Assembly: GCF_947568905.1 (NCBI RefSeq)
Contig: NC_079168.1
Span: forward strand, 14,322,001 to 14,386,000
Length of the DNA stretch: 64,000 bases
Source: Ostrea edulis
Lineage: Eukaryota
Direction: 5' to 3'
Positions 19,455 to 21,145 of the stretch are shown here, in pieces. Numbering within the stretch: the stretch's first letter is position 1; each line of letters opens with the position of its first letter. Made by a program: the position numbers and the translations under genes. The notes below the pieces were generated by a model that ran no database searches, had not been told where the DNA came from, and was given only the letters and a program-made list of their open reading frames with translations.

Positions 19455-19867
19455 CCTAGAGGTCCCCTATAAATCTAGCCTTCAAACTCCTTTTGTGGAC
19501 TCTTCAATGATTAAGTTGTTATTATGCTTCCTTATGATCTATATGATGTAAAATTGGGTACTTTCAGTTAAGGTAGCTCCATCCTCATGTGACTTATCTA
19601 TATTAATGGTTGAAAGTGGAAAAACTGATAACCAAAGAAAATGTGTACGTACTGTAGCTACCTTTTCTCAGACATAACAAAACAGAAGTATAGGTCAACA
19701 TAAGAAAAACACGTTTTCGTAAAACAGAATAATAAAAATAGATAAAGACTTGTTCAGATGACACATCTTTAATGTCAACAGTTTAGATAAACTGGTAATT
19801 TATAAATACATGTATGTATAAATTATTTTTGGATATTAATGAAATCATTGTGGAGCGGTGAGCCGGC

Positions 19868-19939
19868 GGCCAGTTAGCTCTGTTGGTAGAGCACCTGACT
19901 AGAGATTCGGGGGTCCCGGGTTCGAATCCTGGTTTGATC
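19868..19939 (+). pseudogene. tRNA-like sequence inside the 5' LTR (A box and B box, 8-nt anticodon loop)
   Basis: GGCCAGT-TA-GCTC-tgttggta-GAGC-A-CCTGA-ctagagat-TCGGG...GGTTCGAATCC. Cloverleaf-like, but the anticodon loop is non-canonical. Confidence 0.7.
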
Positions 19940-20104
19940 CGTTGCATTTTCTTCCTTCCTGTTACATTTGGTGCCGTAGACCAGCTCCTGGAACTGACAG
20001 ATGAAAATGCCTGCCAGGGGATAAAGATCCTAGGTTGATGTCTTCAGGTGTGAAGACATTTAAGGAGGGATGAATGTAGCGGTCAGCCTGGTTCGATCGC
20101 CGGT

Positions 20105-20182
20105 GGCCAGTTAGCTCAGACGGTAGAACACCTGACTATAGATATATTCAGGGGCCCCTGGTTCGAATCCCGCGGTCTGGTC
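20105..20182 (+). pseudogene. tRNA-like sequence inside the 3' LTR (A box and B box, 12-nt anticodon loop)
   Basis: GGCCAG...CTGGTC acceptor pairing, CCTGA/TCAGG stem, and GGTTCGAATCC at 20160-20170. Confidence 0.7.
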
Positions 20183-20517
20183 CGTTACATTTTCTCCCTT
20201 CCTGTTACAATTGTATTTAAACAATCAGTAGAGGAAATAACAGTATAGAGTTATTGCCCTTGATAACATCATATGATTATATATGGAAAATATAAACTTT
20301 TCCACTATCAATAGTTTACCCCCCCTTTTTTTAATCTGGCGAATAAATTTTCTCATAAATATATATTTATATCATGCTCAAAGTTCCCTTTATCAGTTTC
20401 GTTTCATTTGACCACCCTATATCCACTCATTTACAGAGATGTCTAAAAAAAAAAGTGGCTTCACCCTCTGGAGGGCCCGGGTACAGGTGGTACTGAGGGT
20501 TCCCTATTTTGCCTGTA

Positions 20518-21145
20518 TTTTTATACGCCCGTCGAAGACAGGACATATGGTATGGTGTCGTCCGTCCGTCTGTCTGTATCTTGTGGGCAGGATACAGGCC
20601 GACCGTAAGCTCCAGGATTATTTAACGTTAACTAGACCTTAACTGTCAGTTAAACTTAATTCGTCTTCGTACAACTAGGTCCAGGATATTACAACTTCGT
20701 ATATTTGATCACCATGATGAGAGGAAAATGTCTATTGTTTTTCAAGGTCAAATGTCAAGGTCACAGTATCACTTAGTAAGAAAACCTTGTAGACAGTATA
20801 CAAACCGAATTGTTGGGGTTAGGACCGTCAAACTTCGTACACATACACTTTATGCCAAGTGAAGGGTGCCTATTGTTTCTTAAGGGCAAAGGTCAAGGTC
20901 GTAGTAGCAGGATGCAAACCGATTCGTTGGGGGCAAGGACCATTTAGCTTGATACAGATATATCTTATTCCAAGTGAAAATATTACACAGAGAGTACATG
21001 ATTTGTCTTGGGTTTTTTTTCGATGCAAAGAAAGTATGTCACACCCTGATGATTGGTGATACTATTTGAAGGCAAGTTCTACAAATCATGGTGCAAGAAA
21101 AACGCCCTATATTACCTTTTCACGGGCGTATTATGTACTGTTGGT
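20518..21145 (+). mobile_element. HINE-like element with subterminal inverted repeat and 3' palindrome
   Basis: 5' ttttatacgcccgtc followed by a (gtcc/gtct)n microsatellite; 3' acgggcgta inverted partner followed by a gtac...gtac stem; internal aggtcaa-gtcaaggtc motifs. Confidence 0.65.

What the first reader, a model, noticed from the sequence alone, without database searches (positions are those of the whole stretch)
19851..20209. Miniature LTR retrotransposon whose LTRs each contain a tRNA-like Pol III cassette (Cassandra-like, tRNA instead of 5S)
Seen: complete TRIM anatomy in 359 bp, namely TG...CA LTRs of 116 and 135 bp, a PBS, a polypurine tract, a 4-bp TSD (ATTG) and a 108-bp non-coding interior. 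Most of each LTR is a cloverleaf-like sequence with an A box (TAGCTCxGxxGG), a perfect B box (GGTTCGAATCC) and a following TTTT. The 3' LTR has an extra B-box-like GGTTCGATC. Established: plant Cassandra TRIMs carry 5S rRNA sequence in their LTRs and use Pol III; SINEs are tRNA-derived but have no LTR, PBS or PPT; TRIMs have been reported in bivalves. Inference: a SINE-like tRNA promoter captured in an LTR framework, transcribed by Pol III and mobilised in trans, probably by a Gypsy-type element given the 4-bp TSD. I cannot tell whether this family is already described. The LTRs have diverged, so this copy is old.
Basis: partly seen in the sequence, partly recalled or inferred. Interest (0 to 1): 0.82.

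Follow-up and report, generated by a model that had tools for sequence, protein, structure and literature searches.

The report
Oyster mini-retrotransposon with tRNA-like LTRs (Helenus)

Summary
Window 19851-20209 is a 359-bp terminal-repeat retrotransposon in miniature (TRIM). It has TG...CA LTRs of 116 and 135 bp, a primer-binding site (PBS), a polypurine tract (PPT), a 108-bp interior and a 4-bp ATTG target-site duplication (TSD).

The genome matches Ostrea edulis xbOstEdul1.1 by size and scaffold lengths. It holds thousands of copies (>3,200 first-look candidates). The usual form is 129-bp LTR, 108-bp interior, 129-bp LTR. TSDs were perfect in 16 of 22 copies. Tandem LTR-interior arrays also carry TSDs.

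All 44 LTRs tested in 20 other loci pass Rfam's tRNA threshold (31.6-61.1 bits). They fold as a cloverleaf with an 8-nt anticodon loop. The PBS matches the host tRNA-His 3' end.

This family is a close relative of Helenus-1_SaGl (about 94% LTR identity, hand-counted) and Helenus-2C_CGi. O. edulis is not in that paper's tables, so this is a new member of a known kind.

Pol III transcription remains inferred, because no RNA run was available. No autonomous helper element was found. The window copy itself is decayed: its LTRs are 87% alike, against a median of 96%.

The parts
19847..19850 (+). 5' target-site duplication ATTG
   Evidence: The same 4 bases follow the element at 20210-20213. Perfect 4-bp TSDs occur in 16 of 22 other copies.
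19851..19966 (+). 5' LTR, 116 bp, TG..CA. It lacks 13 bp near its 5' end compared with the family's usual 129 bp.
19868..19940 (+). tRNA-like domain of the 5' LTR. A box 19875-19886, B box 19918-19928, 8-nt anticodon loop. The acceptor stem is broken in this copy.
   Evidence: Rfam tRNA 36.1 bits. ARAGORN anticodon 'agag'. The fold is not a cloverleaf in this copy. 19881T and 19909G are private changes relative to the family (table 3).
19947..19950 (+). TTTT run 7 nt after the tRNA-like domain: candidate Pol III terminator and R/U5 boundary.
   Evidence: The position is conserved in the copies printed. Its function is inferred.
19969..19984 (+). Primer-binding site. It is complementary to the 3' end of host tRNA-His-GTG plus CCA: 9 nt perfect, a 1-nt bulge, then 6 nt.
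   Evidence: Host tRNA-His gene at L032:1471-1542. PBS tally across copies. Kojima Fig. S2 groups such PBSs under tRNA-His.
19985..20020 (+). Interior hairpin 1: outer stem CTCCTGG / CCAGGGG.
   Evidence: MFE fold of the interior, -32.8 kcal/mol, z -1.9. Pairs are kept in most copies. Equivalent hairpins are seen by eye in the published oyster Helenus interiors.
20037..20060 (+). Interior hairpin 2: 10-bp stem GATGTCTTCA / TGAAGACATT just upstream of the PPT.
   Evidence: G:C to A:T double change at 20040:20057 in 3 copies. The published oyster families keep a perfect 7-9 bp stem here with different sequences (hand comparison).
20062..20074 (+). Polypurine tract AAGGAGGGATGAA, abutting the 3' LTR.
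   Evidence: AAGGAGGGAGGAA|TGTAGCGG in 24 of 31 junctions
20075..20209 (+). 3' LTR, 135 bp, TG..CA. It keeps the family's upstream 30 nt with the T-arm-like GGTTCGATC (20090-20098). It carries private 4-nt and 2-nt insertions.
20105..20183 (+). Decayed tRNA-like domain of the 3' LTR. A box 20112-20123, B box 20160-20170, TTTT 20190-20193.
   Evidence: Aligned to the 5' LTR. Not detected by Rfam at E<=1 or by ARAGORN. No cloverleaf fold.
20210..20213 (+). 3' target-site duplication ATTG

Best explanation
The element is an old, mutated copy of a Helenus-type TRIM. This is a non-coding, non-autonomous LTR retrotransposon whose 129-bp LTR has three parts: 30 nt of upstream sequence, a 73-nt tRNA-derived cloverleaf with A and B boxes, and a 26-nt tail containing TTTT.

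Shown here: the structure, the copy number, the 4-bp TSDs, the tandem arrays, the tRNA-like fold, the match of the PBS to host tRNA-His, and homology to the published oyster Helenus families.

Inferred life cycle:
1. RNA polymerase III starts at the tRNA-like domain of the 5' LTR.
2. It reads through the weak T4 run and ends in or beyond the 3' LTR. The tRNA-like domain then acts as the repeated R region.
3. The RNA is packaged in trans by a Gypsy-type element's proteins, possibly through the two conserved interior hairpins.
4. Reverse transcription is primed by tRNA-His.
5. An integrase that makes 4-bp staggered cuts inserts the DNA copy.

My confidence that it is a Helenus TRIM is about 0.95. 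My confidence that Pol III makes the template is about 0.6. The confidence field below refers to the identification.
For: Structure and TSD at the stated coordinates.

Genome-wide family:
- 3,261 first-look candidates, and 48 scored matches at 90-100% identity including tandem arrays.
- Canonical 129 + 108 + 129 bp. LTR-LTR identity has a median of 96.1% and a range of 87.1-100%. TSDs are perfect in 16 of 22 copies and match at 3 of 4 bases in 3 more.
- Arrays with 3-4 LTRs are also flanked by TSDs.
- Exact 18-mer counts: 260 at the LTR/PBS junction, 369 at the PPT/LTR junction, 858 in the LTR core, and 0 in the reversed controls.

tRNA-like domain:
- All 44 LTR domains in 20 loci pass the Rfam tRNA threshold at 31.6-61.1 bits.
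- ARAGORN finds an 8-nt anticodon loop in most of them.
- The MFE fold is a perfect cloverleaf in L007:1745-1817.

Priming by tRNA-His:
- The host tRNA-His-GTG 3' end matches the PBS.
- 40 genomic places have an LTR end followed by the perfect tRNA-His complement, against 0 in controls.
- In the 30 fetched loci (28 distinct places) the exact complement run is 18 nt in 18 loci. That is the canonical length of the copy made from the primer.

Homology to published families:
- Kojima 2024 defines Helenus with these features, reports 4-bp TSDs in animals and lists 16 Ostreidae families.
- Typed motifs of this family hit Helenus-1_SaGl in the supplement.
- Hand comparison of natural copies with the published sequences gives 121/129 identity to the Helenus-1_SaGl LTR.
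- Against Helenus-2C_CGi the tRNA-like domain is 72/73 identical, while the flanking LTR parts are only about 73% identical.
- Raw reads of another oyster sample match the window only across the tRNA-like domain. They continue upstream with the 2C_CGi-type sequence (X21).

Inserted copies decay in the tRNA-like part as fast as elsewhere: 3.6% against 2.2-2.3% at non-CpG sites. So selection acts on the replicating lineage, not on individual copies.
Against: - There is no RNA evidence. No listed run holding the stretch is on record as RNA, and the contigs laid cannot show starts or ends.
- The TTTT lies inside the 5' LTR. A Pol III transcript would have to read through it to reach the interior.
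- A near-perfect cloverleaf could be cut off by tRNA-processing enzymes, which would separate R from the rest of the RNA.
- No autonomous partner was found.
- The identities to the published consensus sequences were counted by hand, not computed.
Confidence: 0.9

Rival explanations
1. It is the same Helenus-type TRIM, but the RNA used for retrotransposition is made by Pol II or by read-through from host genes. On this view the conserved tRNA-like cloverleaf serves another purpose, such as an RNA structure for export, stability, packaging or strand transfer.
For: - The whole 73-nt cloverleaf is 72/73 identical between this genome's typical copies and the C. gigas family. That includes the stems and the odd 8-nt anticodon loop, although a Pol III promoter needs only the A and B boxes (hand comparison).
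- The TTTT 7 nt after the domain would stop much of any Pol III transcription inside the 5' LTR.
- Kojima states that Pol III use is not validated.
Against: - The A box, B box and trailing T-run are arranged exactly as in a tRNA gene.
- Cassandra, the 5S analogue, is reported to be transcribed from its Pol III promoter.
- Helenus-2C_CGi has no T4 anywhere in the element by eye, which fits Pol III read-through.
- No Pol II promoter feature was identified.
Confidence: 0.25
2. It is two tRNA-derived SINEs that landed next to each other by chance, or a fragment of a 237-bp satellite, and not an LTR element.
For: Head-to-tail arrays with a period of about 237 bp exist. tRNA-derived SINEs are common in molluscs (established knowledge).
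Against: - The same two-repeat unit recurs at sharp TG..CA ends with 4-bp TSDs in 16 of 22 copies.
- The arrays themselves carry TSDs.
- A PBS matching host tRNA-His and a PPT sit exactly at the inner LTR edges.
- There is no A-rich or simple-repeat tail.
Confidence: 0.02
3. The LTR domains are working tRNA genes spread by the element, so they expand the host's tRNA supply.
For: Rfam scores reach 61 bits and the best copies fold as a perfect cloverleaf.
Against: - The anticodon loop has 8 nt, and ARAGORN assigns no amino acid to most copies.
- Inserted copies accumulate changes in this domain at least as fast as in the flanks.
- Kojima reaches the same view for most Helenus families.
Confidence: 0.02

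Closest known systems
Helenus-1_SaGl (Saccostrea glomerata) and Helenus-2C_CGi (Crassostrea gigas), Helenus / TRIMp3 group, Kojima 2024 (PMC10886601)
   Same: - Sizes are nearly the same: LTR 129/128 bp, interior 103/101 bp, total 361/357 bp, against 129/108/366 bp here.
- 4-bp TSD.
- tRNA-His type PBS (TTTGGTGCCGT...).
- PPT AAGGAGGGAGGAA.
- The same tRNA-like domain: 70/73 identical to SaGl and 72/73 to CGi, counted by hand.
- The same upstream T-arm-like motif.
   Different: - The host species is not in the paper's tables.
- The LTR flanks and the interior differ by about 6% (SaGl) to about 25% (CGi).
- The PBS carries a 1-nt bulge here.
- T4 is present here and in SaGl but not in 2C_CGi.
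Cassandra (plant TRIM with 5S rRNA sequence in its LTRs)
   Same: A non-coding TRIM with a small-RNA-gene-derived internal Pol III promoter in each LTR. It also forms tandem arrays.
   Different: Cassandra carries 5S rather than tRNA sequence, occurs in plants, and is 565-860 bp long. Rfam found no 5S match in this element. The origin is independent.
biv-TRIM (Satovic et al. 2019, PMC6934838)
   Same: It is a TRIM reported in bivalves, including Ostrea edulis. It also shows solo repeats and tandem forms.
   Different: biv-TRIM has no identifiable PBS and carries a conserved TGATCCCAAAGGAC interior motif. That motif is absent from the whole window even with 2 mismatches allowed, and the element here has a clear PBS.
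tRNA-derived SINEs (SINE2)
   Same: They have a tRNA-derived head with A and B boxes and are non-autonomous retroelements.
   Different: SINEs have no LTRs, PBS or PPT. LINE machinery mobilises them, leaving tails and TSDs of variable length. Kojima proposes that Helenus arose when a SINE inserted into a TRIM LTR.

Membership tests
Helenus (TRIMp3), Kojima 2024 | Short non-coding element with two LTRs (a TRIM) | tested here: met
   359 bp here and 366 bp in the canonical form. The LTRs are direct repeats with TG..CA ends. The interior is a 108-bp non-coding stretch filled by the PBS, two hairpins and the PPT.
Helenus (TRIMp3), Kojima 2024 | tRNA-derived sequence with A and B boxes inside each LTR | tested here: met
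   Rfam tRNA 36.1 bits in the window's 5' LTR. In other copies, 44 of 44 LTRs score 31.6-61.1 bits. The window's 3' LTR copy is recognisable only by alignment.
Helenus (TRIMp3), Kojima 2024 | PBS next to the 5' LTR that is complementary to a tRNA 3' end, and a PPT next to the 3' LTR | tested here: met
   The PBS was compared with the host tRNA-His gene L032:1471-1542.
Helenus (TRIMp3), Kojima 2024 | 4-bp TSD (animal Helenus) | tested here: met
   ATTG/ATTG here. TSDs are perfect in 16 of 22 copies.
Helenus (TRIMp3), Kojima 2024 | Sequence homology to the published oyster families | tested here: met
   Motif look-up in the paper's sequence file. Hand alignment of the natural copies to the text gives 121/129 to the Helenus-1_SaGl LTR. 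This was not computed, because long published sequences were not typed into tools.
Helenus (TRIMp3), Kojima 2024 | Transcription from the LTR's Pol III promoter | not testable with these tools
   No RNA run held the stretch. The source paper also leaves this unvalidated.
Cassandra | 5S rRNA-derived sequence in the LTR | tested here: not met
   An Rfam scan of 19500-20600 at E<=1 found only tRNA and a chance-level mir-214 match.
biv-TRIM | Conserved interior motif TGATCCCAAAGGAC and no canonical PBS | tested here: not met
   The motif gives 0 matches in the window with up to 2 mismatches. A PBS is present.
tRNA-derived SINE | A single tRNA-related head, a body and a tail, with no LTR, PBS or PPT | tested here: not met
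   Paired LTRs, a PBS, a PPT and fixed 4-bp TSDs.

The most novel reading that the evidence does not exclude
The complete 73-nt cloverleaf, including its unusual 8-nt anticodon loop, may be kept by selection as an RNA structure and not only as a promoter. Examples would be a tRNA mimic that gives the uncapped transcript export, stability or packaging. The boldest version is a processed tRNA-like RNA with a four-base anticodon that affects frameshifting of the helper element.

The evidence that leaves this open is the contrast in conservation between oyster genera: 72/73 identity in this domain against about 73% identity in the rest of the LTR.
Probability: 0.15. Interest if true: 0.65.

Novelty: new member of a known kind. 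Interest (0 to 1): 0.27.

Why it matters
The finding shows that the Helenus class is abundant in the European flat oyster, with thousands of copies. One copy has identical LTRs, so the family was active recently. A gene annotator would mistake these copies for thousands of tRNA genes.

The family would be a good system for the still-untested claim that these elements are transcribed by Pol III. The places where an LTR is followed by a copy of tRNA-His are a natural record of tRNA-His priming.

For the scan, the main value is negative: the structure is real, but the concept has been published.

Tried and rejected
**RNA evidence.**
- The one run search found no RNA holders.
- The one reads call showed only DNA contigs and metagenome reads.
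- So transcript starts and ends could not be examined.

**Autonomous helper.**
- I searched the genome for perfect tRNA-His PBSs next to other LTR ends.
- Candidates L049, L058, L061, L068 and L070 have no long open frames.
- The 10 kb downstream of two of them hold no ORF of at least 150 aa on the element's strand.
- Three short frames gave no Pfam match.
- No helper was identified.

**Covariation in the interior hairpins within this genome.**
- The copies are too alike.
- Only one pair (20040:20057) shows double changes, in 3 of 36 sequences.
- An automatic consensus fold on a gapped alignment gave an unconvincing structure.
- The cross-family support is therefore by eye only.

**More diverse families.** A further pattern search found 499 PPT-LTR junctions with other LTR starts.

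**Classical solo LTRs.** None were seen in the fetched loci. The only LTRs there without an interior are the LTR-plus-tRNA-His forms.

**Deliberately not done.**
- Natural copies served as coordinate frames.
- Published consensus sequences were not typed into tools.

Full report
**1. What is in the window**

- An LTR of 116 bp (19851-19966) and one of 135 bp (20075-20209) both begin TG and end CA.
- They enclose a 108-bp interior (19967-20074).
- ATTG flanks the element on both sides (19847-19850 and 20210-20213).
- The repeat finder reports the LTR pair as three collinear blocks at 87-88% identity.
- A global alignment gives 101 matches, 15 mismatches and indels of 13, 4 and 2 nt.
- ARAGORN finds one odd tRNA at 19868-19940 with a four-base anticodon.
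- Rfam's tRNA model scores the same stretch at 36.1 bits, where the threshold is 29 (E 1.2e-5).
- No 5S, hammerhead or other family is found in the region.
- The 3' LTR's tRNA-like part (20105-20183) is recognisable only by alignment to the 5' LTR.
- Neither domain of this copy folds as a cloverleaf any more.

**2. It is a family, not a coincidence**

The window's own genome gives 3,261 first-look candidates. Of these, 48 scored matches fall at 90-100% identity, including head-to-tail arrays with a period of about 237 bp.

In 30 fetched loci the element has sharp ends, TGTAGCGG...CCTGTTACA. The measurements are:
- The canonical form is a 129-bp LTR, a 108-bp interior and a 129-bp LTR.
- TSDs are perfect in 16 of 22 two-LTR copies, and 3 of 4 bases match in three more.
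- LTR-LTR identity within a copy has a median of 96.1% and a range of 87.1-100%.
- One copy (L027) has identical LTRs, so the family was active recently.

Arrays with 3-4 LTRs (L008, L015, L024) are themselves flanked by 4-bp TSDs, as is known for other TRIMs.

Exact 18-mer counts give 260 LTR/PBS junctions, 369 PPT/LTR junctions and 858 LTR cores, with zero in the reversed-pattern controls. This fits one to a few thousand elements once mutation is allowed for.

A contig from an independent DNA run bridges the window's 5' junction (19765-19891), so the insertion is not an assembly artefact.

The 'extra' B-box-like GGTTCGATC of the 3' LTR is the normal state of the family. The window's 5' LTR lost it in a 13-bp deletion between two GCCGG repeats. 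L021 shows the same deletion, also in its 5' LTR only.

**3. The tRNA-like domain**

- In 20 other loci all 44 LTR domains pass Rfam's tRNA threshold, at 31.6-61.1 bits.
- ARAGORN reports most of them with an 8-nt anticodon loop and no amino-acid assignment.
- The best copies, for example L007:1745-1817, have a perfect cloverleaf as their minimum-energy fold.
- The LTR is therefore 30 nt of upstream sequence, a 73-nt cloverleaf, and a 26-nt tail with TTTT 7 nt after the cloverleaf.
- Between the two LTRs of single copies, the tRNA-like part diverges at least as fast as the flanks: 3.6% against 2.2-2.3% at non-CpG sites.
- So inserted copies are not maintained as tRNA genes.

**4. The primer**

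- A pattern search found about ten identical host tRNA-His-GTG genes.
- The gene at L032:1471-1542 ends ...TCCTGGTCACGGCA.
- With CCA added, its complement is TGGTGCCGTGACCAGGAT.
- The family's usual PBS is TGGTGCCGTAGACCAG, which is 9 perfect bases, a 1-nt bulge and 6 more bases.
- Forty places in the genome, against none in the control, carry an LTR-type end followed by the perfect complement.
- In the 30 loci fetched (28 distinct places), the exact run is 18 nt in 18 loci. That is the classical length copied from the primer up to the modified A58.
- Some runs go further: 19, 20, 22, 27 and 39 nt.
- Some of these places are full elements with a 'healed' PBS.
- Others are a complete LTR plus the tRNA copy and then unrelated DNA.
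- This pattern is what reverse transcription primed by tRNA-His should leave behind.

**5. What it is called**

A literature search found Kojima 2024, 'Helenus and Ajax...' (PMC10886601).
- Animal Helenus makes 4-bp TSDs and is thought to depend on Gypsy elements.
- Fifty-one families are listed in pteriomorph bivalves, 16 of them in Ostreidae.
- Helenus, Ajax and Cassandra are grouped together as TRIMp3.

Short motifs of the present family hit Helenus-1_SaGl in the paper's sequence file. The PBS type is listed there under tRNA-His together with Gypsy-39_CGi.

I compared the printed natural copies with the printed published sequences by hand.
- The LTR is 121/129 identical to Helenus-1_SaGl.
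- Three of the eight differences lie in the anticodon loop.
- Against Helenus-2C_CGi the 73-nt tRNA-like domain is 72/73 identical, including the 8-nt loop.
- The upstream 30 nt and the last 26 nt are only about 73% identical to Helenus-2C_CGi.

Raw reads from an 'oyster metagenome' sample give an independent check. They match the window only over 19861-19918. Their upstream loose ends spell the 2C_CGi-type LTR start.

biv-TRIM, the other bivalve TRIM, lacks a PBS and has a motif that is absent here.

**6. Host**

The genome has 894,786,893 bases in 52 sequences. Two of its sequences measure 94,441,566 and 88,744,346 bases. These figures match the Ostrea edulis assembly xbOstEdul1.1: 894.8 Mb, 52 scaffolds, chromosome 4 at 94.44 Mb and chromosome 7 at 88.74 Mb. 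An oyster metagenome also holds the stretch. O. edulis is not in Kojima's Table 1 or Table S1. The papers I could search that mention Helenus add no oyster data and no experiments.

**7. Mechanism**

Shown: the structure, the TSDs, the tRNA-like fold, the tRNA-His PBS and its fossils, and the cross-genus conservation of the tRNA-like domain.

Inferred:
- Pol III starts at the tRNA-like domain of the 5' LTR.
- It reads through the T4 run.
- The tRNA-like domain serves as R.
- The RNA is packaged in trans.
- A Gypsy-type integrase inserts the copy.

Points against a simple Pol III model:
- The T4 run lies inside the 5' LTR.
- A near-perfect cloverleaf should attract tRNA-processing enzymes.

One point in its favour is that the most abundant C. 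gigas relative has no T4 anywhere, by eye.

The interior folds into two hairpins (z about -1.9). Within this genome only one pair shows compensatory change. The published oyster families keep a perfect 7-9 bp stem at the second hairpin with different sequences (hand comparison). I suggest these hairpins are packaging or dimerisation signals. This is inference.

**8. What failed**

There was no RNA evidence. No helper element was found. No further loci could be fetched.

A mobilisation assay is listed as a referred step.

**9. Verdict**

This is an O. edulis member of a known oyster Helenus lineage. Another first-stage note in this genome (s1-287594) flags a similar 393-bp element elsewhere. 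I did not test it.

Noticed in passing
L047, L043, L044, L048, L054, L057 (own-genome loci; PBS at about position 1505 of each after orienting): A complete 129-bp Helenus LTR plus TT is followed by a perfect copy of the tRNA-His complement of 18-39 nt and then by unrelated DNA. This is the structure of plus-strand strong-stop DNA, and in some loci the copy reads past A58 of the primer. The two loci checked by eye (L043, L044) have no matching 4-bp TSD. L047 continues into an inverted LTR end of another Helenus family.
   Followed up: partly
L053 (about 1369-1648): Two LTRs are joined only by TT, the perfect 18-nt tRNA-His PBS and AA. This is an LTR-PBS-LTR form with the whole interior missing.
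   Followed up: no
window 19851-19870 and L021 (5' LTR): The same 13-bp deletion between two GCCGG repeats removes the upstream T-arm-like motif. In both copies it affects the 5' LTR only. It could be recurrent slippage, perhaps during plus-strand strong-stop synthesis. Two cases prove nothing.
   Followed up: partly
own genome: 499 further junctions of the same polypurine tract with LTRs that start TGTAGT, TGTGGT or TGTAAT. L064 shows a Helenus-2-type LTR whose homology to this family begins at the tRNA-like domain. Several Helenus families, or CpG-decayed variants of one family, coexist in this genome.
   Followed up: no
L029:2801-2872: An ordinary tRNA-Met (CAT) gene, 57.7 bits, lies about 1 kb from a Helenus copy. 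This is probably coincidence.
   Followed up: no
window 20548-20600, minus strand: A weak partial match to the mir-214 family: 17.2 bits against a threshold of 66.7, E 0.55. I regard it as chance.
   Followed up: no
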